Positions 48,049-62,688 of a DNA stretch of 64,000 nucleotides are shown here, one piece after another. The stretch is from Rebecca billardiae RCC1528 (Eukaryota; Protista; Haptophyta). A program made the position numbers and the translations under genes. Position 1 is the first letter of the stretch; every line of letters starts with the position of its first letter. The stretch covers positions 1,116,001-1,180,000 of the forward strand of contig OZ251223.1 of NCBI GenBank assembly GCA_965240325.2. The letters run 5' to 3'. The notes under the pieces were generated by a model, which was not told where the DNA came from, ran no database searches, and worked only from the letters and a program-made list of their open reading frames with translations.

Positions 48049-48551
48049 GTCTCCACGGGTGACCTGCGCTACTTGGCGCCACGCGCACGCACGACGTGAT
48101 CGAACAGGGAGCGTGCAGTGCCGCCACCCTGCGCCGTCGCTCTGCGCAGCAGAAAAGTCCGGTCGTCGCCCGAAGTCCATTGCCGCCGGGTTGGCGCGGG
48201 TTCCACGCACGATGGCGAGCGACTCCCGGCTATGACCGGTGGCTTGGAACCTCGTCGACGTCGTGGCCTCTCCAGCGACTGTCTCGCCTGCTCCTCTGCC
48301 TATGCAGCTTGACCAAGGCTGAATCTGAGCAGCATACTCTGAACTCGAACAGCTGTCGTCGTCACGAACATGGGAGACTTCACCACCACGCGGCACATTG
48401 GCTGCCCGCCCGGACGCGCGGATCAGGCAGTTGGTAGTCGACTGAAGTCCCTCGTCTACCGAGTTGACGGATTCAGTGGTCACCGTCCGCACTGGCGTCA
48501 CGTTGGGCAAAGAGCGTATCATCACGGACACGGGCATGCTGTGCTTCTTGA

Positions 48552-51500
48552 TCACCACCCGAAGATGCGCGCGACGAGGAGGTAGACGTGGCCGCCCTTT
48601 CGCGCCTCCCTCTGGATGAGATGGCGCGCGTTCTCCCACTCCTGCGTGCGAGCGCCGCGAGAGGGCAGGGCGCGTGAGATGGCCGTCCCGGGTCGGCTCG
48701 CATAGTCGCGGACTGCCCACCCGTGGCGTGCGCGCGTCCCCGCGCACCCGGCCGGACGCGCGCGCGGCAGCCTACCTCGCGCGCGTACTCCTCGTAGCTG
48801 CCGATCATGTATCGACACGGACCGTCCTTGTACCCGAAGTGGGAGCCGCTGCACGTGGCACCGTTCCGACGCGAGGATCGCTCGCGCCGCGGGTTGGAGC
48901 GCGAGCTGTTGGCGTGGAAGCACTGCGTGCACGTCCACGAGCAGTGCGCCGACGAGTCCTCTGCGCGCAGCTCGGCAGCGCGCTCCTCGATCCACACGTC
49001 CTCAGGCGTCTCGGAGGGCACCTTGAATTGCGCAAACTCGTCGTCGAGCGAGCGCTCGCTGAGGAAGCGCGTGAGCTCGGAGGCGCGCGAGGAGACACCC
49101 GCCGGGCGCAGCGCCGTCGTCGCGTGCAGCGGAATAAAAGCGGTATTTGCGGCGATCATCGCGTGTGCGCCGAGGTCGCCCTGGCCGATGAGCCGCCACG
49201 ACGCTCCTCCGGACTCCGGCTTGGACCAGCCGGCGTCATCGCGCAGGCCCTTGTAGCTCTGGACGAGGCGCGGCGCGGCGGGCAGCGTGCCCTTCTTCAG
49301 GCCAAGATCCACCTTGAAGTGCCACTGCGTGAGCTCCACGTCTTTGGCATCGGGCAGGAGCCCAAGAATCCGGTCACCCTGCTTCAAGCCGCGCGCCTCC
49401 CCCTGCCCGTCGGCCTCGATCACGCCGTGCGAGTGCGCGCTGAGCTGGAGCAGCTCGCGGGCGGCTTGGGCCTTGACACGCACGAGCAGCTTGGGCGTCC
49501 ACCACACCGGCCCGATCGCGGGCACGTCCGACCACATCGAGCAGCTCGTGCGCGCAAAGTTCTCCTCGCTCATGCGGAGGCCGTACTTGAGCTCGGCGAG
49601 AGGCACAGTGGACGGCACGAGCAGGCCGCCCAGGCTCGTGCCGTCGGCTGTGGTCACGAGCTTGACGGAGAGCCGCTCGCCGAGGCACGCGGAGATGCGC
49701 GTCCAGAGCTTGAACACCTGCGCGGACGAATGCAGGCACGCGTGCGTTTGAGCGTGGTCGCAAGGGCAGCGCGGCGAGGTGAGTGAGTACTCGGCCCAGA
49801 GCGCGGCGGGACGGCGCGACGCGGGGCGCGGGCGATGGTGCTGGGCGCGTTGGCGGCGCACCGAGCCGTGCAGCAGGTGCAGCGAGCGCAAGTGCAGCTT
49901 CTGCGCCCGCGCGCCGCGGAGAAAGGCGTCCCAGCGCGCCTCGACGAGCTTGCGCAGCTGCTGGTTATGCTCCACGTCGAGGCACAGCCACTCGCGCACG
50001 AGCTGCGCCTCGCGCACGGCACTTGAGGCCGCCTGGTTGTGTGGCAGCACGAGCCGCGCCGTGCGACCTCCTGCAGGTGTGGGCTGCTTGAAGAGCGCGA
50101 GGCCGAGCTGGCGGGTCTCGCGCTGGACGAGGAAGCCAGCCTGCAGCCCACCCGCAAGCCAGCGCTGGCGCAGCGCCTCCGCCTCCGCGTAGCCGATCGA
50201 CTGGTCGACCTCGACGCAGAGCAACTCGACATGCCCGCGCGCTTCGGCGGCGCTCGCGGAGAGCTGCTCGCGGCTCACGACGCGCAGCGCGGACGAGTTC
50301 AGCCGCTCGAGCCCGACGCCGTCGGCCGCTGAGCGCGAGTCAGTGCCGGCACGTGCGGCGAGGAGCTCGACGAGCCGCGGCTGCTCGCTGATCGGCAGCA
50401 CCAGCGCGCTGTTGAGGAAAGCGTCGACGGTGCTCACGCCACCAAACGCCGGCTGCAGCGCCATCTCGCCGTGCTTGGCGCGCAGGGCGTCCAGCCACGC
50501 GCCGAGCTCGCGCTCGCGCTCGCGGGAGGGCTGGGCGCCAGCTGGCGCGAGCTTCAGGACGTCGCTGACGAACGTGGAGATCTCGCGCGGCGTGAGCGAG
50601 TGCAGCGCCGCGCCGCCGTCGCTCACGCCCCACAGCCCAGTCTCGCCCGCGGCCGCGCGCCGGTCGCCTTTGGTGAGCGCGCCGAGCGACTGCAGCCGGC
50701 GCGAGATGGCGCCGGCGACGCGCATCTCCACTGCGCACGAGCTGGTGAGCAGCACGTACTCGGGCGGCGTTGCCTGGTTGGTGCGGTGCGTGCGGCCAAA
50801 GGACTGCACCACGCGCGAGGCCGACCAGCCAAGCTCGGCGCAGATGTGCACGCGGCGCTGCTGGTTGGGCGCGCGCTTGTCCGCGTGGAGCGATGCACCC
50901 GTCGCGCCCGCGTCGGTGATGATGGCGATGCGCTTGGCGCCCGACTGGAAGGCGTGACGCTCGGCGAGGTTGATCGACTCCGCGTCGGCCGCCTTCCCAC
51001 GGCGCGCCCCGGCGCCCTCGACTGCGCGTCCGCGCAGCACGAAGCCACCGTTCCCGCCGCCCGCCTTCAGCAGCCGCTTGGTCCGGCCAGACATCTCGGC
51101 GACGTGCTCGGGCCCAAAGTAGTTGACCAGCTCATCGAGGCAGCCGGCGGGCAGCGGGATGGCGGCGAGCTCGTCGGCGAGGCTGTCGATCCGCGTGCCA
51201 AGGCCGCGATCGCGCAGCATCGTGAGCACACCCTCGCAGATCTCTCGTGCGGTGGACACGAGCGCGTCCACCGCGACCTCGCCGCCGATCGCGCGGCGCG
51301 TGGACTCATCGCCGGTCGAGAAGAGGCAGATGACCACCGAATGGCCCGCGCGCAGCGCGCGCCGCGTGAGCGCCTTGATGGTCGGCGCCTTGAGCGAGAG
51401 GAGGAGCTGCTCGAACGTGCGCCCAAGCGCGCGCGTGAGGGCGCCGCGCTGCACCTTCACGCCGCCACCACCGGCGCCCACACTCGCATTGTGGGCGTCG

Positions 51501-53248
51501 ACCGCGCCCAAGACGCCGCGCCAGAAGGCGGCGAGCGAATCGTAGGCGCGCGTTGCGTCCGAGGACAGCACGAGCTGCGTCGACGTGACGTCCACACCAC
51601 GGAAGCCCAGCGAGCGCGCGATGTAGGCGCCCTCGGACTTGAGCGAGACGGCGAGCATCTCGAGCGAGCCGGGCGACTCCTTCAGCACCGCGGCCACGTC
51701 GTTGAAGCTCTTGAAGGCACAGCGCACGCCCCACAGCCCGAGACGAGTCATGTAGCTCATGTCAGCAAACTGCGTCGCCGCGGTCGCCGAAACGTACACG
51801 ACGCGTGAGTTGGGGTGCTCGGCCTGCAGCTCGATTGCCGCGGCGCCGATGGAGCCGCTCTTCCCGGCTTTGGCCTTGTGCGCCTCGTCCATCGCGATCA
51901 GCCCGTCGAAGCCACGCCCGCCCAGCCATGCATGCAGCTGGTCGCGCCGCGCCGCGCTCGTGAGCTGCGAGTATGGGACGAGCAGACAGCCCTCCGTGAA
52001 CGCGCCGGCGATGGCGCCTCCCTGCGGCAGCTTGGAGAGCAACTTCACGGGCACGTCAGTGGCGCCAATGTCGCGCAGGTCGCGCTCCGCGTCGAGGAGC
52101 AGGTCTGCGCTGGCAGTGAGCCACACGCTGCGCTTGCGGCCGCGCAGCCAGTTCTCCCAGCACAGCGCCGCAATCTCGCGCCCCTTGCCGACGCCTGTGC
52201 CGTCGCCGATGAGGAAGCCGGCGCGCTCGTCAGAGGGCAGCATCTGCTCGTGCCGCTGGCAAGCGTACACGACGGCCTCAAGCTGCACGCGCGAGAGCAC
52301 GCCCGAGCTGCACGCCGCCTCAGGCAGCGCGAGCGAGTACGTGATGTCAGGTGGCTCGATAGTCGCGAGGGTGGCTGCCTCGACGACGTGGTCGTCGTGC
52401 ACCGGGCCGAACGGGAGCTTCCACGGCGAGTACTCGTGGAACGTGTCGTCGGTAGAGTCCCCAGCTGTCTCGGCCGTCGGCGCTTCGGCTTCGGCGGTGG
52501 AGTCGCGCTCGCGGCTGGCGGCGGCAAGGGCGTCACGCTGCGCAGCGGCGCCCGTTTGCGCGAGTTGTGCCAGCTCCGCAGCAGTCGCCAGCGGCGCGGC
52601 CGCAAATGCGTCGGTCGAGGGGGCTGGCGCGCCCGCTTCAGCTGGCTGCGCAGAGCCAGCGACCGTGGCCTCAGCCTCCTCGTCCGAGTCGTCGAGCCAA
52701 GCCATCGGCAGCGGCGCGGCCGGCGTTGCGCTGCATGCATGCGCGGTGATGATCGCACGCACGTTCGTCGAGCCCGGCGCTACGCTCGGCATGAGCGGCG
52801 AAACTTGAGCTTGTGCCACGCGCGCTGTCACGTACGCCGTATCAGCCGTCGCTCGCGCCATAGGCGTCACGGGAGCGCCCTCCTTGTCGCGGAAGCGCTT
52901 CCGCGCCGCGAGTTCCTGCCCCTTGCATTCGCCTATGAGCGCCGCAGCACCCTCAGCGCCCGACGGCGAGTCGAAGGGTGCGATCGTTTCAGCGACGAGC
53001 GCAGTCAGCTGTCTTGTAGTCTGATCTTGCTCCATCTCGAGCGGCAGCTCCGTGAGCGGTCGATCACGCTTGCGCGCGCTCAGCATCGCGGGCTCGTGCG
53101 CACGGTCCATAGACGGCATCTCACTCTCGATCACGTCCCTCGCGGCTCGCTCGAGCTCGAGAGCCGGCGTGGGCGGTGATCGCGCGTCCGATATCGCCAT
53201 GCCGCCATCTGCGCGCGGCGCAGCCTCCGAGCTGATCACCGTGCTCAT
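48552..53248 (-). CDS. Strawberry notch-like SF2 helicase-related protein with C-terminal extension
   Basis: [95 protein letters not shown]. Inferred introns near 49860-49718 and 48775-48642. Confidence 0.92.
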
Positions 53249-53490: not shown

Positions 53491-56127
53491 ATGGGCGATG
53501 CCGGGGTCCGCCTGCTCCGGCGCGCGGCGGGGCGGGGCGACGCACGTGCGACGTTCCTGCTGGCGAGGCGCGCCGAATTGGGCGACGGCGTCGCGCAGGA
53601 CGTCGCCGAGGCGCATCGCCTCTATGTCCTCGCTGCGAATCGTGGGTTCGGGCAAGCGCAGCAACGGTTGGGCGAAATCTACGCGGCCGTGCTGAACTGG
53701 GCAGAGGCTACGCGCTGGTACCGACTGGCGGCCGAGCAGGGCGACGCGCAGGCGCAGAACAACCTGGGCTGGTGCTACGACCGAGGCGAGGGCGTGCCGC
53801 AGGACTTGACCGAGGCAGTGCGCTGGTACCGGCTGGCGGCCGAGCAGGGCTACGCAGCTGCGCAGAGCAACCTGGGCGTGTGCTACTATGATGGCAAGGG
53901 CGTGCCGCAGGACTGGGCCGAGGCGGTGCGCTTGTACCGGCTGCCGGCCGAGCAGGGCTACGCAGCTGCGCAGATCAACCTGGGCGTGTGCTACGAACAA
54001 GCCAAGGGCGTGATGCAGGACTGGGCCGAGGCAGTGCGCTTGTACCGGCTGGCGGCCGAGCAGGGCACTGCAGCTGCGCAGGCCCGCATGGGCGTGATGT
54101 TTGAACTAGGCAAGGGCGTGCCGCAGGACTGGGCCGAGGCGGCGCGCTGGTACCGGCTGGCGGCCGAGCAGGGCGATGCAGCTGCGCAGATCAGCCTGGG
54201 CGTGCGCTACCAACGAGGCGAGGGCGTGCCGCAGGACTTGACCGAGGCAGTGCGCTGGTACCGGCTGGCGGCCGAGCAGGGCTACGCAGCTGCGCAGAGC
54301 AACCTGGGCGTGTGCTACTATGATGGCAAGGGCGTGCCGCAGGACTGGGCCGAGGCGGTGCGCTGGTACCGCCTGGCGGCCGAGCAGGGCAATGCAGATG
54401 CGCAGATCAACCTGGGCGTGTGCTACGAACAAGCCAAGGGCGTGATGCAGGACTGGGCAGAGGCAGTGCGCTTGTACCGGCTGGCGGCCGAGCAGGGCAC
54501 TGCAGCTGCGCAGGCCCGCATGGGCGTGATGTTTGAACTAGGCAAGGGCGTGCCGCAGGACTGGGCCGATGCGGCGCGCTGGTACCGGCTGGCGGCCGAG
54601 CAGGGCGATGCAGCTGCGCAGATCAGCCTGGGCGTGCGCTACCAACGAGGCGAGGGCGTGCCGCAGGACTTGACCGAGGCAGTGCGCTTGTACCGGCTGG
54701 CGGCCGAGCAGGGCTACGCAGCTGCGCAGAGCAACCTGGGCGTGTGCTACTATGATGGCGAGGGCGTGCCGCAGGACTGGGCCGAGGCGGCGCGCTGGTA
54801 CCGGCTGGCGGCCGAGCAGGGCGATGCAGGTGCGCAGAGCAACCTGGGCACATGCTACAAACAAGGCAAGGGCGTGGCGCAGGACTGGGCCGAGGCGGTG
54901 CGCTGGTACCGGCTGGCGGCCGAGCAGGGCAATGCAGGTGCGCAGACCAACCTGGGCTGGTGCTACCAACGAGGCGAGGGCGTGCCGCAGGATATGGCTG
55001 AGGCGGTGCGCTTGATCCGGCTTGCGGTCGAGCAGGGAAATGCAGTTGCGCAGTGCAGCCTGGGCGCATGCTACGAACAAGGCGAGGGCGTGCCGCAGGG
55101 TATGGCCGAGGCGGTGCGCTTGTACCGGCTGGCGGCCGAGCAGGGCATTGCAGCTGCGCAGAGCAACCTGGGCGTGTGCTACTATGATGGCGAGGGCGTG
55201 CCGCAGGACTGGGCCGAGGCGGCGCGCTGGTACCGGCTGGCGGCCGAGCAGGGCGATGCAGGTGCGCAGAGCAACCTGGGCACATGCTACAAACAAGGCA
55301 AGGGCGTGGCGCAGGACTGGGCCGAGGCGGTGCGCTGGTACCGGCTGGCGGCCGAGCAGGGCAATGCAGGTGCGCAGACCAACCTGGGCTGGTGCTACCA
55401 ACGAGGCGAGGGCGTGCCGCAGGATATGGCTGAGGCGGTGCGCTTGATCCGGCTTGCGGTCGAGCAGGGAAATGCAGTTGCGCAGTGCAGCCTGGGCGCA
55501 TGCTACGAACAAGGCGAGGGCGTGCCGCAGGGTATGGCCGAGGCGGTGCGCTTGTACCGGCTGGCGGCCGAGCAGGGCATTGCAGATGCGCAGATCAACC
55601 TGGGCAGGTGCTACGACCGAGGCGAGGGCGTGCCGCAGGATATGGCCGAGGCGGTGCGCTTGTACCGGCTGGCGGCCGAGCAGGGCGACGGAGGTGGGCA
55701 GTACACCCTGGGCGTGTGCTACGAACGAGGCGAGGGCGTGCCGCAGGATATGGCCGAGGCGGTGCGCTCGTACCGGCTGGCCATCGACGGCGGCCAGCCA
55801 GAAGCCCACTTGGCATTGGCGCGCCTGCTGCTTGCAGGCGGGGCCGTGCAGCGCGACGTAGCGGAGGGAGTGCGGCTGCTGCGCCGCGGGCACGAGCTTG
55901 ACGGCTCCGTGGTGGATCCGAGCGAGGTGCTCGGCGACTATGCCGGAGATCGCGAGGTGGCCGCTGCGTGCTGCATGGTGTGCGCCAAGTCGGGCCGTGG
56001 CGTGAAGAAGTGCGAGCGGTGCCTCGTGGCGGTCTTCTGCTGCCGCGAGCACCTGCGGAGCGCGTGGAACACGCACAAGCCCCACTGCACGGAGTGGCGC
56101 GCCGCCGCGGCGGCGTTGACTCCGTGA
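53491..56127 (+). CDS. Sel1-like repeat protein with C-terminal MYND zinc finger, copy 1 (19 core repeats)
   Basis: 36-aa repeats AQxNLGxCYxxGxGVPQDxAEAVRWYRLAAEQG; C-terminal CMVC..KKCERC..FCCREHLRSAWNTHKPHC. Intronless. Confidence 0.95.
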   Translation: MGDAGVRLLRRAAGRGDARATFLLARRAELGDGVAQDVAEAHRLYVLAANRGFGQAQQRLGEIYAAVLNWAEATRWYRLAAEQGDAQAQNNLGWCYDRGEGVPQDLTEAVRWYRLAAEQGYAAAQSNLGVCYYDGKGVPQDWAEAVRLYRLPAEQGYAAAQINLGVCYEQAKGVMQDWAEAVRLYRLAAEQGTAAAQARMGVMFELGKGVPQDWAEAARWYRLAAEQGDAAAQISLGVRYQRGEGVPQDLTEAVRWYRLAAEQGYAAAQSNLGVCYYDGKGVPQDWAEAVRWYRLAAEQGNADAQINLGVCYEQAKGVMQDWAEAVRLYRLAAEQGTAAAQARMGVMFELGKGVPQDWADAARWYRLAAEQGDAAAQISLGVRYQRGEGVPQDLTEAVRLYRLAAEQGYAAAQSNLGVCYYDGEGVPQDWAEAARWYRLAAEQGDAGAQSNLGTCYKQGKGVAQDWAEAVRWYRLAAEQGNAGAQTNLGWCYQRGEGVPQDMAEAVRLIRLAVEQGNAVAQCSLGACYEQGEGVPQGMAEAVRLYRLAAEQGIAAAQSNLGVCYYDGEGVPQDWAEAARWYRLAAEQGDAGAQSNLGTCYKQGKGVAQDWAEAVRWYRLAAEQGNAGAQTNLGWCYQRGEGVPQDMAEAVRLIRLAVEQGNAVAQCSLGACYEQGEGVPQGMAEAVRLYRLAAEQGIADAQINLGRCYDRGEGVPQDMAEAVRLYRLAAEQGDGGGQYTLGVCYERGEGVPQDMAEAVRSYRLAIDGGQPEAHLALARLLLAGGAVQRDVAEGVRLLRRGHELDGSVVDPSEVLGDYAGDREVAAACCMVCAKSGRGVKKCERCLVAVFCCREHLRSAWNTHKPHCTEWRAAAAALTP

Positions 56128-56862
56128 CTCTGACTGCTGCCAATCATCAGCAGACTGATTCTGACTAGTGACTCTGAGACGGCAGTGTCGGAGTGAGTGA
56201 CCGCACGACGACGACGGGGCCGCCAGAGCCCAGAAGTGATGCGAGTATAAGATTTTTTGACGCGAGTATTATAGTATATAGCAGATAGAATAATACAATA
56301 AGCTGCTACGTACGGGCGATCGACGAACCGTAGTTCGTCGATCTGCGTATATAATCGATCTGCGTTGACTGGTTCACTGAAATCACTCAGACTGAGACTA
56401 GCTACTCAGTGAGTTCTCAGAGTCTGAGACGAGAGTAGCAGCAGGCAGAGTATAGATAGGGCGAGTAGCTCTCTTACGGTTCTTAGATGAGCCAGAGAGA
56501 GATCGAGACATTGTCATCGAGAGATGACGCCGAGACAGCCTGGTGATTATCACTCATCACTGCCGCCGACTGCGCCCCGCGTCTCGTTGACGTCTGACTA
56601 TAGTCTGTAGTCAGTGATGAGTAAGAGTTTCAACTGACTATAGTACAGCAGTAACGTACGACTACCATTCACATACAGACACATTGAGTGAGTATAGACT
56701 ATAGTCAGTGAGGTCGACGGTTACTCTGAGCCGAGTCAATACGGCTATATAATAGTCGCGTAGTACACACACACACACACACACTGACACACGGCACACA
56801 CACACTACACAGTGAGTCACACACACACACACCGACACACACTGTGACACTTAATTCACACA

Positions 56863-59436
56863 CTCCACCCAATCCTCGCCATCTGCCGGCACTTCCTGTA
56901 CCTGGCATGCTAATGGTGGCCACGGACGGCTCATTCGATGCAGAGAACGGACAGGCTGCATGTGCCTTTTCCTTCTTCAGTGGCAACAATTACACTGCCC
57001 CTGTGCATGTGTATTGCTCCAAGTTCGAGGGGCACCAGGCACCAGGCCCAGCCGAATTCATGGCCATCACCGATGCATTGGTGCAGATAGACCCCACCGC
57101 CAACCTGCTGGTGTGCACTGACCTGCAGGATATGGTAAAGGCAGCCGAAATGTGGCAAAACGACCCCTGGGACCGACGGCTGCGGCAGGGGCACCACGCG
57201 TACGCACCATACATCGCCAGGGTCATGAGCCTGGTGGGCTGGCGCCGCTTGATGCATGGCAGCACCACTTCATTTGAGCATGTCAAGGCGCACTCTGCTG
57301 ACGATGCGGCAGCGCTACACCTCAGCCTCACGCACACTCAGGGGGACCATCACTGCACTGTCAGCCAACACAGTGTGGCGGCTTTGCGCCAAGCAGGGAT
57401 GAACCCCAAAACCCTGCTCAACGCATGCAGCGATGCTGGGGCCAAGCTATGCTGCTCTGGCCCCACAACCCCCTGTGTGACTCACAAGAGAGGTGGCCAC
57501 CCAAATGCGGGTTCTCATGCGCTGGTACAGCTGGCCAACGGAGAGCCAGTGGCAGGCAGAATCAAGCCCCTTGTGTATGACAGTGTGCTGTCACAAAGGG
57601 CAACGCACCTGCAAGCCACCAAGTCCAGCTGTGACTTGGTGGGTAAATGGACTGGCGTGTGGCCAGAGGCCTCCACTGGCATCCTACGGACCTGGCAGGC
57701 CAGCACTGTGCCTGCCTACTACATACTCCACCACGGATATGAGTTCCTGCAGCCGGCTGCCCTGCGAGACCCGACGTTGTTATCTGTGCGATTCCAGTCC
57801 GGGGCTGCATTTAGCGATGCCTGCCCCCTCTGTGATCATACTCCACTGCTACATCCAGCGCCAGATACTGAACACCACCTCTTCTCCGAGTGCCCTGAGG
57901 TCGATGCCTACCGCGAGGCTGCTGCCAGAAGCATATCGCATATAATTGAGCCCTTCATGCAGGGACAGGCTGCAGCATGGAACTTGGCGCGACATGTGTG
58001 CTCTGGGGCTGCCCTCTTGGGCAGGGTGCCCAGCACACTGAAGACCACTGTGGGGGGCAACGTGCATCTCGGCAGGACCATGCACGTGGCCTTACTGAAG
58101 GCAGGGCTAGGCATCATGCAGGCCCGCAAGGACGTGGACTCCCAGCTGTCAAAGGCAGGGCGTCTCCTCCGACATGCCAGGGAGCTTCGGCCGCCGCCTG
58201 GGCACGACCAGGGGGGGCAGCCCCCGCCCCCACAGGCACAGGCAGGCCCAGGAGGGGCGATTGCCATGAATAATCAGTTACAGGGACCACCTGTCATCCA
58301 GCAGCAACCCCCTGCCCAGGCTGGCCAGGGCTGGCAGGCAGGCGCGGGGCAAGCCAACCTGCACCAGCCAATAGCGCGCGGTCACCACGTGCGCCCTCAG
58401 CTACTCTTGCGGGCATGGCCTCTACAGCGTGCTCGCCCCCTCCCTATGGTGATTGCGTGGCCTCTGCAGCCTGCCACACCTCTTGTGGCATGGCCGCTCC
58501 AATATGTTACCCCACTGGCTCGCCGCGATGTGCATCCGTCGGACAATGTGTTGACACATGGGGGCACTGAGATTGAGGCAGACCCTGCTGCGGGCAGTCA
58601 CACTGGTCACGGAGCTCACAACTGCATTACACAATCAGACACTGGACAGCAGGCCACACAGCCACCTGCTGGCTCTGCCAAGACACTGGCAGCCCCCAGG
58701 CGCAGGCTGCCTCCTCCTAGTCAAGCTCAGCAAGACAGCCCCCCGCCCAAACGACACTGCCCACCCCGCCAGGCAAATGTGCCTATCCTAACACCAACTG
58801 GCAGGCAGGCTCAGCCTGCGCAGCGAAGTATGCAACCCCCTGCAAAGAGCAGCAGAAAGAGGCGCGCAAACGACACCTCCCCAGGCGTATTAGCCATCGC
58901 CACCACTCTGCTTGCGTCCTACAGCGGCCCACGCCCTGACTTGATGCCCAATATCGCACACATGTCTGACATGACACCATCTGCCTCCATAGCAGCACGA
59001 GTGAAATACAGGCGCCTCACTGCCAGGACCAGTGGCCCAGACCCCGGCCCAGCTACTGGGCTCGCTGACAGCCCCCTCCGTCCCCTCCCCCGCGCAGGGA
59101 TCGGCTAGTGGCTGGCCCTCTGCCCACACTGGGGCACTCTAGGGGGTGCCCAGTCTGCCGACTCGGCTCAAACTCGATGATCTCGAATTGCAAGGCAGTG
59201 CACTGCTGGTACCTGGGACCACCCCACAGTGTTGGGCTTGTATGCTGTCGGCAATGGCATACCCCCGCCCCCTCTGGAGGCGGGCTGTCCACAGCGGAGT
59301 GGTGTCAAGGCACTTGGTGTATCGGTCAGTGGTTTGAGGTTGGGTGAGGGTGGTGGTTGGTTGGGGGCTGGCCAGGGTAGGGCTGGAGGCTTCGGCCGCC
59401 AGTCTGATCACCCGGAGCCCGTTATAAAGGGGAATA

Positions 59437-59437
<1 letters not shown>
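56863..59437 (+). mobile_element. 5'-truncated non-LTR retrotransposon (RNase H + CCHC zinc knuckle) between CA/TA microsatellites
   Basis: ORF to 59108: VATDGS, AEFMAI, VCTDLQ, FEHVKAHS, NACSDAGAK (RNase HI motifs); CPLC..EHHLFSEC. ~330-bp 3' UTR then (TA)n(CA)n. CA-rich 5' flank. No RT present. Confidence 0.8.
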
Positions 59438-59555
<118 letters not shown>

Positions 59556-59698
59556 TCACAGCTAGCGCGCATGATAGTGAGATATTTATTGTCATCCGAA
59601 TACGTGACCCGCCGGTCCCGGACACCGTATAGTCTGTAATCTCTGACTCAGACCCGCGCGCGGCATCGCCACCCGCGCTGCCCGCCCACGCCCCCGAA

Positions 59699-60964
59699 TC
59701 ACCGCACTGCAGCAGTAGCGGCAGCAGCGTCGGCAGACTCATTGAAGGAGGCCCTGGCCGCGGCCAACGCTCGCGCGCCGGGCGTGCTGGCAGCCTGCTT
59801 TCTGGGCGTGGACGCGCCAGCGCCACCTTGCAACTGCGGGAGTGTTGCGCGCGAGACCGGAGCCTCGGACCCGGCCCGTGTGCAGCTCCGCGAGCCAGAC
59901 CCCGCGCCCCCGACGGCGATGAGGACGCCCTGGAAGACGACGCAGCAGGCCAGCGCGAGCATCACGCGCGCGCACACCCACAGCTGCCGCTCGAGCGTGC
60001 GCGGCGCCACCGGGCCGAGCAGCCCGGCGTAGACCGCCTCCTCCCGCGCCATCTGCGCGCCGATCTCGGCGAGCTCCTCGCGCAGCGCGGCGATGCGCGT
60101 GCGCGCATCCGCCAGCCGCGCGCTCTCCGAGCCCACGCTCGCCCTCAGCTTCGAGTCCTCCGCGCCCGCCCGCTTGAGCTCGAGCTGGGTGTCGCGCAGC
60201 TCCCGCTGGAGGCGCTCGCCCTCGCGCTGCGCCGTCGAGTGCGCGTCGCGCGCTGAGATCAGATCTGCATCGAGCTTGCGCGTGCTTGTCTCGGCCGCGC
60301 TCACCGCGTCGTGGGCTCGATCCAGCTCTGCGGACAGCGCCTTGACCGCAGCCACGCGCTCGCGCTCCTGCTGCCGCGCGCTGCGCAGCTTGGCGCCGAT
60401 CTGCTCGGCCTCGCGAGAGGCCTGCTGCTCGGCCGCGCGCAGCTGCTCGAGCTCTGCGGCTCCGGCGAGCGCCGACGCCTGGGCGGCGGTCCGCTGCGCG
60501 TTGAGGAGGTCTCGCTCCACGGCGAGCGCACGGATGCGCTCTTCGGCGGCGACGAGGGTCACATTCAGCCGCACGACCTCCGCGCCGCTCTCGTTGGCCG
60601 CTCGGAGTGCAGTGTGCGCCGCCCGCGAGAGGTGCTCCTGCTCGCGTACCGAGGCGGCCGCGGCGGTCTCGAGGAGGTCGGCCTCCTTGCGCAGCCGCGC
60701 GACCTCGGCAGCGACCGCGTTTTCTTCCTCGCGCGCCGCTCGCGCACGCTCGCGCAGGCCGACGAGCTCAGCACGCGCCACTTTGGAGCGCGCCTCCATC
60801 TCCTGCAGCTCGGCCGCATCGCGCTCGACCGCCCGCGCCAGATCGGCGCCAGCGAGCAGCCACGGCGGTGGATTCGGCAGGAGCTCGTGCGTGAGGGCCA
60901 CGCCGACCGCAATGGCCACCGTCGCTGTGATCATCGCGCACGCAGCCGCGCCGGAGGGCGCCAT
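59699..60964 (-). CDS. Coiled-coil protein with hydrophobic segments near both termini; function unknown
   Basis: MITATVAIAVGVAL, ~270 aa of E/R/A/L heptads, then LWVCARVMLALACCVVFQGVLIAVGG. Confidence 0.7.
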   Translation of the reverse strand: MAPSGAAACAMITATVAIAVGVALTHELLPNPPPWLLAGADLARAVERDAAELQEMEARSKVARAELVGLRERARAAREEENAVAAEVARLRKEADLLETAAAASVREQEHLSRAAHTALRAANESGAEVVRLNVTLVAAEERIRALAVERDLLNAQRTAAQASALAGAAELEQLRAAEQQASREAEQIGAKLRSARQQERERVAAVKALSAELDRAHDAVSAAETSTRKLDADLISARDAHSTAQREGERLQRELRDTQLELKRAGAEDSKLRASVGSESARLADARTRIAALREELAEIGAQMAREEAVYAGLLGPVAPRTLERQLWVCARVMLALACCVVFQGVLIAVGGAGSGSRSCTRAGSEAPVSRATLPQLQGGAGASTPRKQAASTPGARALAAARASFNESADAAAATAAVR

Positions 60965-61203
60965 CGCCTTGTGTCGCCGCGCCCGCTTGTGGTCGGGGTG
61001 TTTTGAATGGCGGCCGAGGCGGCCATCAAACTCACGGTCGTCATCTTTTTGAAGCGCGCGCAGTATTTTGAATTCTTTTCTCGGATGAGACCTGCGCCGT
61101 CCTACCTGTGTCGTTAAATCATAGAATGAGTCCGGAGGCCGGACTCGACTCGACTCCGCTGCCGCCTGCCTGGCAAATTTGAAATTGGCATCAGCGATAC
61201 AGC

Positions 61204-62688
61204 ATGGCGGGCGATGCCGGGGTCCGCCTGCTCCGGCGCGCGGCTGGGCGGGGCGACGCACGCGCGACGTTCCTACTGGCGAGGCGCACCGAAGCGGGCG
61301 ACGGCGTCACGCAGGATGTCGACGAGGCGGTGCGCCTCTATGTCCTCGCTGCGAATCGTGGGTTTGCGCAAGCGCAGCAACACTTGGGCGAGATCTGCGC
61401 GGCCACGCAGAATTGGGCCGAGTGTGCGCGCTGGCTCCGGCTGGCGGCCGAGCAGGGCGAATCGACTGCTCAAGCCCGCATGGGCGCGCTGTATGCAGAA
61501 GGCAAGGGCGTGCCGCAGGACTGGGCCGAGGCGGCGCGCTGGTACCGGCTGGCGGCCGAGCAGGGCAATGCAGGTGCGCAGATCAACCTGGGCTTGTGCC
61601 ACGACGAAGGCAAGGGCGTGCACCAGGACAGGGCCGAGGCAGTGCGCTGGTACCGGCTGGCGGCCGAGCAGGGCACTGCAGCTGCGCAGAGGAACCTGGG
61701 CGTGTGCTACGCACGAGGCGAGGGCGTGCCGCAGGACTGGGCCGAGGCGGTGCGCTTGTACCGGCTGGCAGCCGAGCAGGGCAATGCAGGTGCGCAGACC
61801 AACCTGGGCTGGTGCTACAACGAAGGCGATGGCGTACTGCAGGATATGACGGAGGCGGTGCGCTTGTACCGGCTGGCGGCCGAGCAGGGCTACGCATCTG
61901 CGCAGACCAGCCTGGGCACGTGCTACGCACGAGGCGAGGGCGTGCAGCAGGATATGGCGGAGGCGGTGCGCTGGTTCCGGCTGGCGGCCGTGCAGGGCTA
62001 CGCAACTGCGCAGAGCAACCTGGGCGAGTGCTACGATCAAGGCAAGGGCGTGCACCAGGACTCGGCCGAGGCATTGCGCTGGTACCGGCTGGCGGCCGAG
62101 CAGGGCTACGCAGATGCGCAGAACAACCTGGGCGTGTGCTACGAACGAGGCGAGGGCGTGGCGCAGGACTTGGCCGAGGCTGTGCGCTTGTACCGGCTGG
62201 CGGCCGAGCAGGGCAATGCAGCTGCGCAGTTTGCCCTGGGCGCGTACTACCAACGAGGTGAGGGCGTGCCGCAGGATATGGCCGAGGCGGTGCGCTCGTA
62301 CCGGCTGGCCATCGACGGCGGCCAGCCAGAAGCCCACTTGGCATTGGCGCGCCTGCTGCTTGCAGGCGGGGCCGTGCAGCGCGACGTGGCGGAAGGAGTG
62401 CGGCTGCTGCGCCGCGGGCACGAGCTTGACGGCTCCGTGGTGGATCCGAGCAAGGTGCTCGGCGACTATGCAGGAGATCGCGAGGTGGCCGCTGCGTGCT
62501 GCATGGTGTGCGCCAAGTCGGGCCGTGGCGTGAAGAAGTGCGAGCGGTGCCTTGTGGCGGTCTTCTGCTGCCGCGAGCACCTGCGGAGCGCGTGGAAAAC
62601 GCACAAGCCACACTGCACGGAGTGGCGCGCCGCCGCGGCGGCGGTGACTCTGACTGCTGCCAATCACGCAGAGTCTGAGACGGCATAG
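61204..62688 (+). CDS. Sel1-like repeat + MYND protein, copy 2 (8 core repeats)
   Basis: N-cap and C-terminal ~120 aa are nearly identical to copy 1; the repeat array is shorter and different. Confidence 0.95.
   Translation: MAGDAGVRLLRRAAGRGDARATFLLARRTEAGDGVTQDVDEAVRLYVLAANRGFAQAQQHLGEICAATQNWAECARWLRLAAEQGESTAQARMGALYAEGKGVPQDWAEAARWYRLAAEQGNAGAQINLGLCHDEGKGVHQDRAEAVRWYRLAAEQGTAAAQRNLGVCYARGEGVPQDWAEAVRLYRLAAEQGNAGAQTNLGWCYNEGDGVLQDMTEAVRLYRLAAEQGYASAQTSLGTCYARGEGVQQDMAEAVRWFRLAAVQGYATAQSNLGECYDQGKGVHQDSAEALRWYRLAAEQGYADAQNNLGVCYERGEGVAQDLAEAVRLYRLAAEQGNAAAQFALGAYYQRGEGVPQDMAEAVRSYRLAIDGGQPEAHLALARLLLAGGAVQRDVAEGVRLLRRGHELDGSVVDPSKVLGDYAGDREVAAACCMVCAKSGRGVKKCERCLVAVFCCREHLRSAWKTHKPHCTEWRAAAAAVTLTAANHAESETA

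What the first reader, a model, noticed from the sequence alone, without database searches (positions are those of the whole stretch)
53491..62688. Sel1-MYND paralogues with fixed caps and a hypervariable, shuffled 108-bp repeat array: candidate variable-receptor system
Seen: both intronless genes share near-identical N-caps and MYND C-termini but carry 19 versus 8 core repeats. The DNA scaffold (taccggctggcggccgagcagggc, gcgcag, ctgggc, ggcgtg..caggac, gccgaggcggtgcgc) is almost invariant even at synonymous sites. Whole codons change at ~7-8 fixed positions: after QG (D/Y/T/N/I/E), after AQ (N/S/I/A/T/C/R/F), after LG (W/V/T/A/R/L/E), after CY (D/Y/E/Q/K/A/N, then R/D/Q/E) and after QD (L/W/M/R/S). 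Variants recombine between repeats. Known: high internal conservation plus hypervariable codons marks fungal NLR WD40/TPR/ANK sensors and brown-algal ROCO/NB-ARC repeats; MYND is a protein-interaction module. Inference: a recombination-diversified sensor (Sel1 array) coupled to a constant effector (MYND), possibly algal innate immunity.
Basis: partly seen in the sequence, partly recalled or inferred. Interest (0 to 1): 0.8.

Follow-up and report, generated by a model that had tools for sequence, protein, structure and literature searches.

The report
Fast-diversifying Sel1-repeat/MYND adaptor genes
Two neighbouring genes of a GC-rich haptophyte alga encode a coil of near-identical 36-residue Sel1 units ending in a constant MYND zinc finger. 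Only the residues at peptide-groove positions change faster than neutral, as in candidate immune sensors of fungi and brown algae, but no target, expression or immune role is shown.

Summary
Gene A (53491-56127, 878 aa) has 19 core Sel1 units and gene B (61204-62688, 494 aa) has 8. Both carry a shared N-cap and a C-terminal MYND finger.

Eight codon sites per 108-bp unit are hypervariable. Their omega is about 3.9, against 0.28 for the other codons. Six of the eight align with residues that contact a bound peptide in the concave groove of the solved Sel1 protein EsiB.

- Synonymous sites are not frozen (pS about 0.13).
- A's 19 units come from about 11, through two very recent 432-bp in-register duplications. 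One left an exact chimeric unit.

The genes belong to a family with at least about 130 C-termini in this genome. Homologues with the same architecture elsewhere, including another Pavlovales alga, have ordinary diverged repeats.

"Diversifying binding surface on a constant docking domain" is supported. The same positions vary in all Sel1 proteins, so the excess rate is what is special here.

The scan had already found this family several times on other DNA of this genome. I class it as a new variant of a known kind.

The parts
53491..56127 (+). Gene A: intronless Sel1-repeat/MYND gene, 878 aa
   Evidence: Single ORF. Pfam Sel1 E 6.5e-176 and zf-MYND 25.6 bits against a cutoff of 22.7.
53491..53700 (+). 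Gene A N-cap (aa 1-70): degenerate Sel1-like capping helices
   Evidence: 89.4% nt identity to the N-cap of B. The motif is shared by family members. Predicted helical, based on the AF2 model of B.
53701..55752 (+). Gene A core array: 19 units of 108 bp (A1-A19)
   Evidence: Tandem Repeats Finder period 108, 19.3 copies. Unit register and codon table.
53809..54672 (+). First recent 432-bp block duplication (A2-A5 copied as A6-A9)
   Evidence: A2=A6 differ by 0 nt, A4/A8 by 1 nt, A5/A9 by 1 nt and A3/A7 by 6 nt. Period 432 at 93% match.
54673..55536 (+). Second recent 432-bp block duplication (A10-A13 copied as A14-A17)
   Evidence: A11=A15, A12=A16 and A13=A17 are identical.
55105..55212 (+). 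Unit A14: crossover junction, an exact chimera of A18 codons 1-15 and A10 codons 16-36
   Evidence: 0 mismatches as a chimera against 5 to the best single parent.
55753..55968 (+). Gene A C-cap and linker (degenerate Sel1 units, aa 755-826)
   Evidence: Register. 97.8% nt identity to B over the C-terminal region.
55972..56088 (+). Gene A MYND zinc finger (aa 828-866)
   Evidence: Pfam PF01753, residues 828-866. In the B-based alignment of 14 paralogues (gene A not included) the Cys/His ligands are invariant.
61204..62688 (+). Gene B: intronless Sel1-repeat/MYND gene, 494 aa
   Evidence: Single ORF. Pfam Sel1 E 9.2e-83 and zf-MYND 27.1 bits. AF2 solenoid pLDDT above 95 for residues 11-370, falling towards the linker, and below 50 over the MYND finger.
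61204..61416 (+). Gene B N-cap (aa 1-71)
61417..62280 (+). Gene B core array: 8 units of 108 bp (B1-B8)
   Evidence: Tandem Repeats Finder period 108, 8.2 copies. Codon table. No unit is closer than 9 nt to any unit of A.
62281..62496 (+). Gene B C-cap and linker
62500..62616 (+). Gene B MYND zinc finger (aa 433-471)
   Evidence: Pfam PF01753, residues 433-471. Invariant C432 C433 C436 C446 C449 C455 H459 H467 H470 C471 in 14 paralogues.

Best explanation
A and B are two tandem members of a large family of Sel1-like-repeat proteins specific to this lineage. The family has at least about 130 C-termini in this 72-Mb genome. No signal peptide, membrane segment or enzymatic domain was detected, so the proteins are probably intracellular. 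Each protein is a right-handed alpha-solenoid built of 36-residue units: helix B (13 residues), a 3-residue loop, helix A (13 residues) and a 7-residue loop. It is capped at both ends and finishes in a conserved MYND zinc finger.

Shown: the scaffold of every unit is kept by purifying selection and by recent common descent or concerted evolution. Eight sites are hypervariable (unit sites 15, 17, 20, 21, 24, 27, 28 and 36). Six of them lie on helix A and two lie just outside it. Six of the eight align with residues that line the concave peptide-binding groove of the solved Sel1 protein EsiB. These sites accumulate amino-acid changes two to four times faster than synonymous changes. Arrays grow and are reshuffled by in-register unequal crossover. 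Gene A went from about 11 to 19 units through two such events.

Inferred: the proteins act as adaptors of variable specificity. The Sel1 groove would bind diverse peptide or protein ligands, and the constant MYND finger would dock each member onto one shared partner, by analogy with proline-rich PxLxP-type motifs bound by other MYND fingers. What the ligands are (viral, microbial or self) is unknown.
For: Domains and fold:
- Pfam Sel1 and zf-MYND.
- PDB sequence hits to 6ok3 at 2e-93 and 4bwr at 5e-90.
- AF2 pLDDT 86.8 with 13/3/13/7 helix-loop geometry.
- Foldseek top hits are all SLR proteins.

Family size: 143 matches to the 99-aa linker+MYND module, of which about 125 have no internal stop.

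Selection:
- Variable sites were defined on non-window genes. On the window's units they give dN 0.71 against dS 0.155, and scaffold omega 0.22.
- A codon model on the variable codons alone gives omega 3.90, against 0.28 for the rest. The likelihood-ratio test against omega=1 gives 2dlnL 88.4, p 5e-21. The window-only estimate is 3.86, p 1.7e-4.
- Per-site counts give dN/dS of 2.0-4.2 at the eight sites and 0.05-0.3 at scaffold sites.
- At the eight sites, differences at codon positions 1-2 outnumber those at position 3 by 403 to 99.
- Transitions make up 0.35 of changes at these sites against 0.51 elsewhere.

Codon bias does not explain the frozen scaffold: unpreferred A/T-ending codons are conserved in a genome with GC3 of about 0.86.

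Groove mapping: the EsiB paper states that first helices form the concave, less conserved face. Its peptide-contact residues D304, T306, A309, N310, A313, R317, Y272, K280, A341 and N345 align to unit sites 15, 17, 20, 21, 24 and 28.

Shuffling: the exact chimera A14 and the identical 108-bp units. Four other long arrays in the family show the same block duplications.

Derived state: homologues with the same architecture elsewhere have only 20-54% identity between units, against 68-73% here.
Against: - No expression, population or binding data.
- The hypervariable positions are the ones that vary in Sel1 repeats generally (rho 0.76). Their location alone is therefore not special.
- Between subfamilies, scaffold synonymous divergence is about half that of the C-terminal domain (0.20 against 0.39 of identical-residue codons). 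If this reflects constraint rather than gene conversion, the estimates that scale to scaffold or pooled synonymous change are inflated up to about twofold. The per-site values for sites 21, 27, 28 and 36 would then fall to about 1.
- Units recombine, which inflates likelihood-ratio tests made on a single tree.
- By their own synonymous counts, sites 15 and 27 are not individually significant.
- In the newest duplicates within gene A, none of the few point differences outside the recombinant unit A3/A7 lies at a hypervariable site.
- The 3D face was inferred by alignment to EsiB and by helix periodicity. It was not measured on model coordinates.
- The MYND finger itself was modelled poorly (pLDDT below 50).
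Confidence: 0.6

Rival explanations
1. An ordinary Sel1 adaptor family. Exposed groove positions are simply unconstrained, and the look of a frozen scaffold with hypervariable codons comes from very recent tandem and block duplication, possibly with synonymous-site constraint. No diversifying selection is involved.
For: The same positions vary in 1,230 generic, mostly bacterial Sel1 units (rho 0.76). Much of A's array is days-old duplication in evolutionary terms. Scaffold synonymous divergence is about half that of the C-terminus between subfamilies. Sites 15 and 27 are not individually significant.
Against: Neutral sites cannot exceed the synonymous rate. Yet omega estimated from the variable codons' own synonymous changes is 3.9 (p 5e-21 for the family, 1.7e-4 for the window). 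The ratio of position 1-2 to position 3 differences is 4:1 against a neutral 2:1. Other surface positions that vary in generic Sel1 units (sites 1, 5, 9, 30, 33, 34) are far less variable here. Nucleotide identity between units exceeds amino-acid identity (85% against 73% in A).
Confidence: 0.2
2. A true innate-immune receptor system. The Sel1 arrays would recognise pathogen or virus molecules and MYND would trigger a defence output, functionally equivalent to fungal or brown-algal NLR- and ROCO-type candidates.
For: The evolutionary signature matches those candidates: conserved repeats, positive selection on the binding face, repeat shuffling, a large clustered and lineage-specific family. 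Homologues of the same architecture are few and diverged elsewhere.
Against: There is no NTPase switch, TIR, death or enzymatic domain. MYND is only known as a docking finger. There is no induction, expression or population evidence. The same signature is found in non-immune adaptor families.
Confidence: 0.2
3. A targeted mutagenesis mechanism writes the variable codons. This could resemble a diversity-generating retroelement, given the RNase H ORF next door, or it could use a DNA motif as a hotspot.
For: An RNase H ORF lies between A and B. Six codon sites in or next to hypervariable codons keep unpreferred A/T third bases family-wide, and sites 16-18 form the palindrome GCAGCTGC.
Against: The RNase H ORF is a 5'-truncated copy of a dispersed transposon family of at least 27 copies with no reverse-transcriptase hit here. 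Differences at variable codons involve all base pairs and are not adenine-specific (58% involve A against 60% expected). No template repeat was seen. The newest duplicates show no changes at the variable sites.
Confidence: 0.04
4. Assembly artefact: the 19-unit array of gene A is over-expanded by mis-assembly of near-identical 432-bp blocks.
For: Three consecutive units (324 bp) are repeated with zero differences, within a 432-bp block whose first unit differs by 5 nt. No reads could be laid.
Against: The junction unit A14 is a clean in-frame chimera, as expected from real unequal crossover. The first block pair has diverged by 1-6 nt per unit. Four other family genes have arrays of 17-21 units with similar block structure. 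The assembly is highly contiguous (41 contigs).
Confidence: 0.05

Closest known systems
Highly internally conserved WD40/ANK/TPR repeats of fungal NLRs (Podospora nwd/het genes; Dyrka et al. 2014, PMC4986451)
   Same: Solenoid or propeller repeats that are near-identical to each other. Positive selection acts on a few positions per repeat, on the binding surface (concave side for TPR). There is repeat shuffling and concerted evolution within and between paralogues, and repeat-number variation (one search compared).
   Different: There is no NACHT/NB-ARC NTPase and no N-terminal effector domain here. The repeat type is Sel1, which is not among the types reported for fungal NLRs. Unit identity of 68-73% is below their 85% threshold. 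Allelic polymorphism is untested.
Brown-algal LRR-ROCO and NB-ARC-TPR candidate receptors (Zambounis et al. 2012, PMC3341825; PMC11378527)
   Same: An algal, lineage-specific, fast-evolving repeat family proposed as variable recognition molecules, with shuffling of repeat modules.
   Different: According to those papers' titles and abstracts (I did not read the full texts), the brown-algal repeats are shuffled as exons and are joined to a GTPase or NB-ARC domain. Here the whole array is one intronless ORF, shuffled by unequal crossover, and it ends in MYND.
Helicobacter pylori Sel1-like (Hcp/slr) gene family (Ogura et al. 2007, PMC1941758)
   Same: Same repeat fold. Gene-family expansion shows omega above 1, and most selected residues lie on the SLR surface.
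   Different: Those are secreted bacterial proteins with few, diverged repeats, and selection acts between strains. There is no MYND, no internal repeat conservation and no array shuffling.
EsiB/c5321 and other solved SLR proteins (4bwr, 6ok3, LceB 8sxq, LpnE 6deh, HcpC 1ouv, SEL1L)
   Same: Sequence E-values down to 2e-93, the same 13/7/13/3 helix-loop geometry and the same superhelix. The EsiB groove residues that hold a peptide align with the hypervariable sites.
   Different: They are single-copy or small-family proteins without hypervariable paralogues and without a MYND finger.
Substrate-adaptor superfamilies with a constant docking domain and a positively selected variable domain (F-box and MATH-BTB families of nematodes and plants; from my own knowledge, Thomas 2006, not checked here)
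   Same: The logic of the architecture: one constant docking module, a variable binding module under positive selection, and large clustered lineage-specific expansions.
   Different: The docking domain here is MYND, whose partner is unknown. No link to ubiquitin ligases is shown.
MYND-type alpha-solenoid expansions noted in green algae (PMC13126933)
   Same: Species-specific expansions of alpha-solenoid proteins that carry MYND fingers in algae.
   Different: That paper reports them only in Chlorophyta, as candidates from an organelle-targeting screen. It analyses neither Sel1 hypervariability nor selection. The present genome is a haptophyte according to other agents' notes and a weak lead of my own.

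Membership tests
Sel1-like repeat (SLR) proteins, Pfam PF08238 | Tandem 36-residue repeats that match the Sel1 profile above the curated cutoff | tested here: met
   565 bits for A and 270 bits for B against a cutoff of 30.7, with 19 and 9 stretches.
Sel1-like repeat (SLR) proteins, Pfam PF08238 | Helix(13)-loop(7)-helix(13)-loop(3) units stacked into a right-handed superhelix | tested here: met
   AF2 secondary structure shows exactly this spacing at pLDDT above 95. It matches Table 2 of the EsiB paper. Foldseek top hits are SLR structures, with TMt up to 0.93.
zf-MYND, Pfam PF01753 | Match above the curated cutoff | tested here: met
   25.6 bits for A and 27.1 bits for B against a cutoff of 22.7.
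zf-MYND, Pfam PF01753 | Eight zinc ligands in the C4-C2HC arrangement | tested here: inconclusive
   Seven canonical ligands are invariant in 14 paralogues. The sixth position is an invariant His (C455-x3-H459) where homologues elsewhere have Cys. The fold was not confidently modelled (pLDDT below 50).
zf-MYND, Pfam PF01753 | Binds proline-rich (PxLxP-type) partner motifs | not testable with these tools
   Needs binding assays.
NLR / STAND immune receptors | Central NACHT or NB-ARC NTPase domain | tested here: not met
   No NTPase domain appears in the Pfam scan of either protein at E up to 0.01. The whole length is accounted for by caps, Sel1 units and MYND.
NLR / STAND immune receptors | N-terminal effector or death-type domain | tested here: not met
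   The N-terminus is a Sel1-like capping helix pair.
Highly internally conserved (HIC) repeat receptors as defined for fungi (PMC4986451) | At least 85% amino-acid identity between repeats over at least 100 residues | tested here: not met
   Mean pairwise unit identity is 72.6% in A and 67.5% in B; nucleotide identity is 84.7% and 80.4%. Criterion taken.
Highly internally conserved (HIC) repeat receptors as defined for fungi (PMC4986451) | Positive selection confined to a few positions on the interaction surface | tested here: met
   Omega is 3.9 at eight sites and 0.28 elsewhere. Groove mapping.
Highly internally conserved (HIC) repeat receptors as defined for fungi (PMC4986451) | Repeat-number polymorphism between alleles or strains | not testable with these tools
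Only variation between paralogues was seen (6-21 units).
Highly internally conserved (HIC) repeat receptors as defined for fungi (PMC4986451) | Repeat shuffling or concerted evolution | tested here: met
   Exact chimeric unit and block duplications. Scaffold synonymous divergence is lower than that of the C-terminal domain between subfamilies.
Diversity-generating retroelement | Reverse transcriptase, a template repeat and adenine-specific substitutions | tested here: not met
   No reverse-transcriptase hit. The RNase H ORF belongs to a dispersed transposon. Substitutions are not adenine-specific.
Brown-algal exon-shuffled repeat receptors | One repeat per exon, shuffled as exons, joined to ROC-COR or NB-ARC | tested here: not met
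   Each array is a single uninterrupted ORF. No GTPase or NB-ARC domain.

The most novel reading that the evidence does not exclude
A non-NLR variable recognition system in a haptophyte. More than a hundred intracellular Sel1 solenoids would have peptide grooves kept diverse by selection and reshuffled by unequal crossover, and each would be docked through a constant MYND finger to one common output, for example a repressor or degradation machine. The system would restrict viruses or other intracellular parasites. A DNA-level signal may also be involved: unpreferred A/T third bases and a palindrome are conserved next to the variable codons, and could focus recombination or mutation there.
Probability: 0.15. 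Interest if true: 0.85.

Novelty: new variant of a known kind. Interest (0 to 1): 0.6.

Why it matters
Haptophytes are major marine primary producers and are heavily infected by giant viruses, yet almost nothing is known about how they recognise non-self. This family shows the evolutionary signature that has served elsewhere to nominate recognition molecules: conserved repeats, positive selection on the binding face, repeat shuffling, and a large clustered lineage-specific expansion. Here that signature sits on a different chassis, Sel1 plus MYND with no NTPase switch. If the ligands prove to be foreign, this would be an independent invention of variable intracellular receptors. If they are host proteins, it is still a natural library of peptide-binding solenoids with a defined set of specificity positions. 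That would be useful for understanding Sel1 and TPR recognition codes. The claim can be tested directly with strain resequencing, infection transcriptomes and MYND pull-downs.

Tried and rejected
There is therefore no evidence on expression, strain variation or read support for the assembly.
2. The whole-protein word search was swamped by bacterial Sel1 proteins and gave no information on relatives. The region search on the C-terminus had its candidate list saturated in the same way. I therefore ran the exhaustive search on the 99-aa linker+MYND module.
3. The neighbouring Strawberry-notch helicase was searched to place the organism. The best hits are unnamed environmental proteins at 50% identity, so it gave no placement. 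The haptophyte/Pavlovales assignment rests on other agents' notes and on weak Pavlovales sp. CCMP2436 hits.
4. Codon bias as the cause of the frozen scaffold was rejected, because unpreferred codons are the conserved ones.
5. A DGR-like or retroelement-driven mechanism was rejected.
6. The scaffold-only IQ-TREE run on the window's units returned default values (omega 1.000, kappa 1.000) and is disregarded. The family-level estimate for non-variable codons (0.28) is used instead.
I mapped sites through the EsiB alignment instead.
8. Retroposition as the origin of the A/B pair was considered, because homology stops at the CDS ends. I favour old tandem duplication with gene conversion, since N-cap and C-terminal identities differ (89% against 98%). 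This is not resolved.

Full report
WHAT IS THERE

The window is GC-rich (about 0.56-0.82 per 2 kb). It lies at C3:1116001-1180000 of a 72-Mb assembly in 41 contigs.

Pfam gives the following:
- Sel1 at E 6.5e-176 for A (19 stretches) and 9.2e-83 for B (9 stretches).
- zf-MYND above its gathering score in both: residues 828-866 of A and 433-471 of B.
- No NTPase, TIR, death or enzymatic domain.

Tandem Repeats Finder reports a 108-bp period with 19.3 copies in A and 8.2 in B. For A it also reports a 432-bp period at 93% match.

Laid out in 36-residue register, both proteins consist of an N-cap, core units, two degenerate capping units, a linker and the MYND finger. The core unit reads AEAVRWYRLAAEQG-x-A-x-AQ-xx-LG-x-CY-xx-G-x-GV-x-QD-x.

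The N-caps are 89.4% identical at DNA level over 208 bp and the C-termini are 97.8% identical over 370 bp. There is no similarity in 1.5 kb upstream or in the 1.3-1.5 kb compared downstream. No unit of B is closer than 9 nt (of 108) to any unit of A.

HOW A REACHED 19 UNITS

Units A2=A6, A11=A15, A12=A16 and A13=A17 are identical. A4/A8 and A5/A9 differ by one base. Unit A14 is, with zero mismatches, the first 15 codons of A18 joined to codons 16-36 of A10.

That is the footprint of an in-register unequal crossover between A18 and A10, which duplicated A10-A13 as A14-A17. An earlier event of the same kind duplicated A2-A5 as A6-A9. A therefore descends from an array of about 11 units, and "19 versus 8" overstates the difference in distinct content.

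The same pattern occurs in four other long arrays (17-21 units) among the 26 family genes I extracted. Typical arrays have 6-11 units. So "shuffled" is correct, and the mechanism is visible.

THE CODON PATTERN

Among the 27 core units, most scaffold codons are nearly fixed, and some of the fixed codons are unpreferred ones. Ala16 is GCA in 24 of 27 units, whereas the neighbouring helicase gene uses GCA for 10% of Ala and has GC3 of 0.855.

The variable codons change at positions 1-2 and keep their third base. Site 17 reads GCT/GGT/GAT/GTT/ACT/TCT. Site 20 reads AGC/ATC/ACC/GCC/AAC/TGC/TAC.

Scaffold pS among the window's units is 0.13.

IS IT MORE THAN RELAXED CONSTRAINT?

To avoid circularity I defined variable sites on 247 units from family genes outside the window. 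Sites with entropy above 2 bits were 15, 17, 20, 21, 24, 27, 28 and 36. I then tested them on the window's units.

- Pairwise estimates on the window's units: dN at these sites is 0.71 against dS of 0.155 over all sites (omega about 4.6). Scaffold omega is 0.22.
- Codon model (GY+F3X4) on a fixed tree of 181 unique units of the close subfamily: fitted to the eight variable codons alone, so that it uses only their own synonymous changes, it gives omega 3.90. The remaining 28 codons give 0.28. Fixing omega=1 costs 2dlnL = 88.4 (p 5e-21).
- The window's 23 unique units alone: omega 3.86, p 1.7e-4.
- Parsimony counts per site: dN/dS of 2.0-4.2 at the eight sites and 0.05-0.3 at scaffold sites. Own-site significance is reached at sites 17, 20, 21, 24, 28 and 36, but not at 15 and 27.
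- In 116 independent nearest-neighbour pairs, differences at positions 1-2 against position 3 of the eight codons are 403 to 99. The neutral expectation is 2:1.
- Transitions make up 0.35 of those differences against 0.51 elsewhere. This is what selection for any amino-acid change would give, rather than a mutational spectrum.
- Nucleotide identity between units exceeds amino-acid identity: 84.7% against 72.6% in A.

CAVEATS ON THE SELECTION CLAIM

(a) Units recombine, which inflates tree-based tests.

(b) Between the close and the distant subfamilies, identical-residue codons differ in 39% of cases in the C-terminal domain but in only 20% in the repeat scaffold. If this is gene conversion, it affects variable and silent sites alike and the ratio stands. 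If it is constraint on silent sites, the omega values that scale to scaffold or pooled synonymous change are inflated up to about twofold. The per-site values would then stay clearly above 1 only at sites 15, 17, 20 and 24.

(c) The few point differences between the newest duplicates in A, leaving aside the recombinant unit A3/A7, are not at hypervariable sites.

(d) The hypervariable positions are the same positions that vary most in 1,230 generic, mostly bacterial Sel1 units (rho 0.76). The location of the variability is therefore a general property of the fold. What is special here is the rate excess. It is also notable that other generically variable surface positions (1, 5, 9, 30, 33, 34) are far less variable here.

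WHERE THE SITES LIE

AlphaFold2 on B, with a 14-paralogue alignment, gives pLDDT 86.8. Block means are above 95 over residues 11-370 of the solenoid, apart from one block at 91 and one at 94, and below 50 over the MYND finger. The helices are 13 residues long, separated by alternating 3- and 7-residue loops. Helix A covers unit sites 16-28, and helix B covers site 36 to site 12 of the next unit.

The best sequence and fold matches are solved Sel1-like proteins: 6ok3, EsiB 4bwr, LceB, LpnE and HcpC.

The EsiB paper (PMC3851747) states that the first helices form the concave face, and that this face is less conserved than the convex one. It also reports that in the crystal the groove holds the C-terminal peptide of a neighbouring molecule through D304, T306, A309, N310, A313, R317, Y272, K280, A341 and N345.

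In the phmmer alignment of B to 4bwr the chain numbering equals the paper's numbering. Those residues fall on unit sites 15, 17, 20, 21, 24 and 28. Six of the eight hypervariable sites are thus peptide-contact positions of a solved homologue.

Site 21 is Asn in 63% of close-subfamily units. It corresponds to the Asn that anchors the peptide backbone in EsiB. I could not compute concavity on coordinates, so this mapping is by homology and not by measurement.

FAMILY AND RELATIVES

The 99-residue linker+MYND module matches 143 places in this genome, of which about 125 have no internal stop. About 27 of them are at 80% identity or more, mostly on contig 3 between 0.78 and 1.53 Mb. A third member lies 4 kb beyond B.

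An exhaustive search of 1.84 billion representative proteins with the same module found 224 hits. None had E below 1e-30, and identity was at most 55%.

Several hits have the same architecture of Sel1 units followed by a C-terminal MYND. Two of them come from identifiable sources: a protein of Pavlovales sp. CCMP2436 and an MMETSP transcript. One 490-aa hit even shares the N-cap motif. Their units are only 20-54% identical to each other, against 68-73% here.

The architecture is therefore older than this genome. The conserved-scaffold state and the expansion to more than a hundred copies appear to be derived here.

Other agents' notes identify the genome as a Pavlovales haptophyte. I did not verify that beyond the CCMP2436 hits. 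I found no paper that describes a Sel1-MYND family. One paper notes MYND-bearing alpha-solenoid expansions in green algae, without any selection analysis.

INTERPRETATION

Shown:
- A large, mostly intact family of Sel1 solenoids with a constant MYND finger.
- Diversifying evolution at groove positions.
- Array growth and shuffling by unequal crossover.

Inferred: these are adaptors of variable specificity, whose groove binds diverse peptides while MYND docks them to one shared partner.

Not shown: any ligand, any partner, expression, strain polymorphism, or a link to immunity.

The family fails the architectural definition of NLRs. It fails the 85% identity criterion of fungal highly conserved repeats. 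It is not exon-shuffled like the brown-algal candidates, and it shows no features of a diversity-generating retroelement. It works like those systems in its evolutionary dynamics without being a member of any of them.

PRIOR FINDINGS AND LIMITS

The scan had already flagged and followed up this same family several times on other DNA of this genome. My tests agree with those that report faster-than-neutral change at groove positions. They also agree with the one that stresses that the positions are generic to Sel1.

Noticed in passing
window 56844-59108 (+): The 754-aa ORF with an RNase H domain between genes A and B is a 5'-truncated copy of a dispersed element family. The family has at least 27 copies at 94-99% identity, with full open frames of about 2,080 aa elsewhere, so it is a recently active transposon. 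Here it is flanked by (AC)n and (AT)n microsatellites at 56765-56842 and 59436-59553.
   Followed up: partly
window 53701-55752 and 61417-62280 (unit codon sites 15, 16, 17, 27, 28, 35): Six codon sites keep A/T at the third base across the whole family (GC3 0.07-0.34) in a genome with GC3 of about 0.86. They include the invariant Ala16 and Asp35. All six lie in or next to hypervariable codons, and sites 16-18 form the palindrome GCAGCTGC. This is unexplained. It could be descent, gene conversion or a DNA-level signal.
   Followed up: partly
window 48473-53248 (-): A 1,591-aa single-ORF Strawberry-notch-type helicase (AAA_34 plus Helicase_C_4). Its closest database relatives are unnamed environmental proteins at only about 50% identity.
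   Followed up: partly
window 59699-61261 (-): A 520-aa ORF that is Ala/Glu/Arg-rich and looks coiled-coil, with a hydrophobic segment and no significant Pfam domain. Its ORF overlaps the start of gene B by about 58 nt on the opposite strand.
   Followed up: no
L002:985-2688 (G000:C3:1181028-1182716, about 4 kb beyond the end of gene B): A third tandem family member of 568 aa. Its first 40 residues are identical to those of B and its C-terminal module is 99% identical. B and this gene therefore seem more recently duplicated or converted than A and B.
   Followed up: partly
L007 and L025 (G000:C3:942479-951486): Two adjacent family genes share three identical 108-bp units. This indicates recent exchange or duplication between genes as well as within arrays.
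   Followed up: no
window 62500-62616 and 55972-56088 (MYND): The sixth zinc-ligand position of the MYND finger is an invariant His (C-x3-H) in all 14 paralogues aligned. Homologues of the same architecture from other organisms have the canonical Cys.
   Followed up: partly
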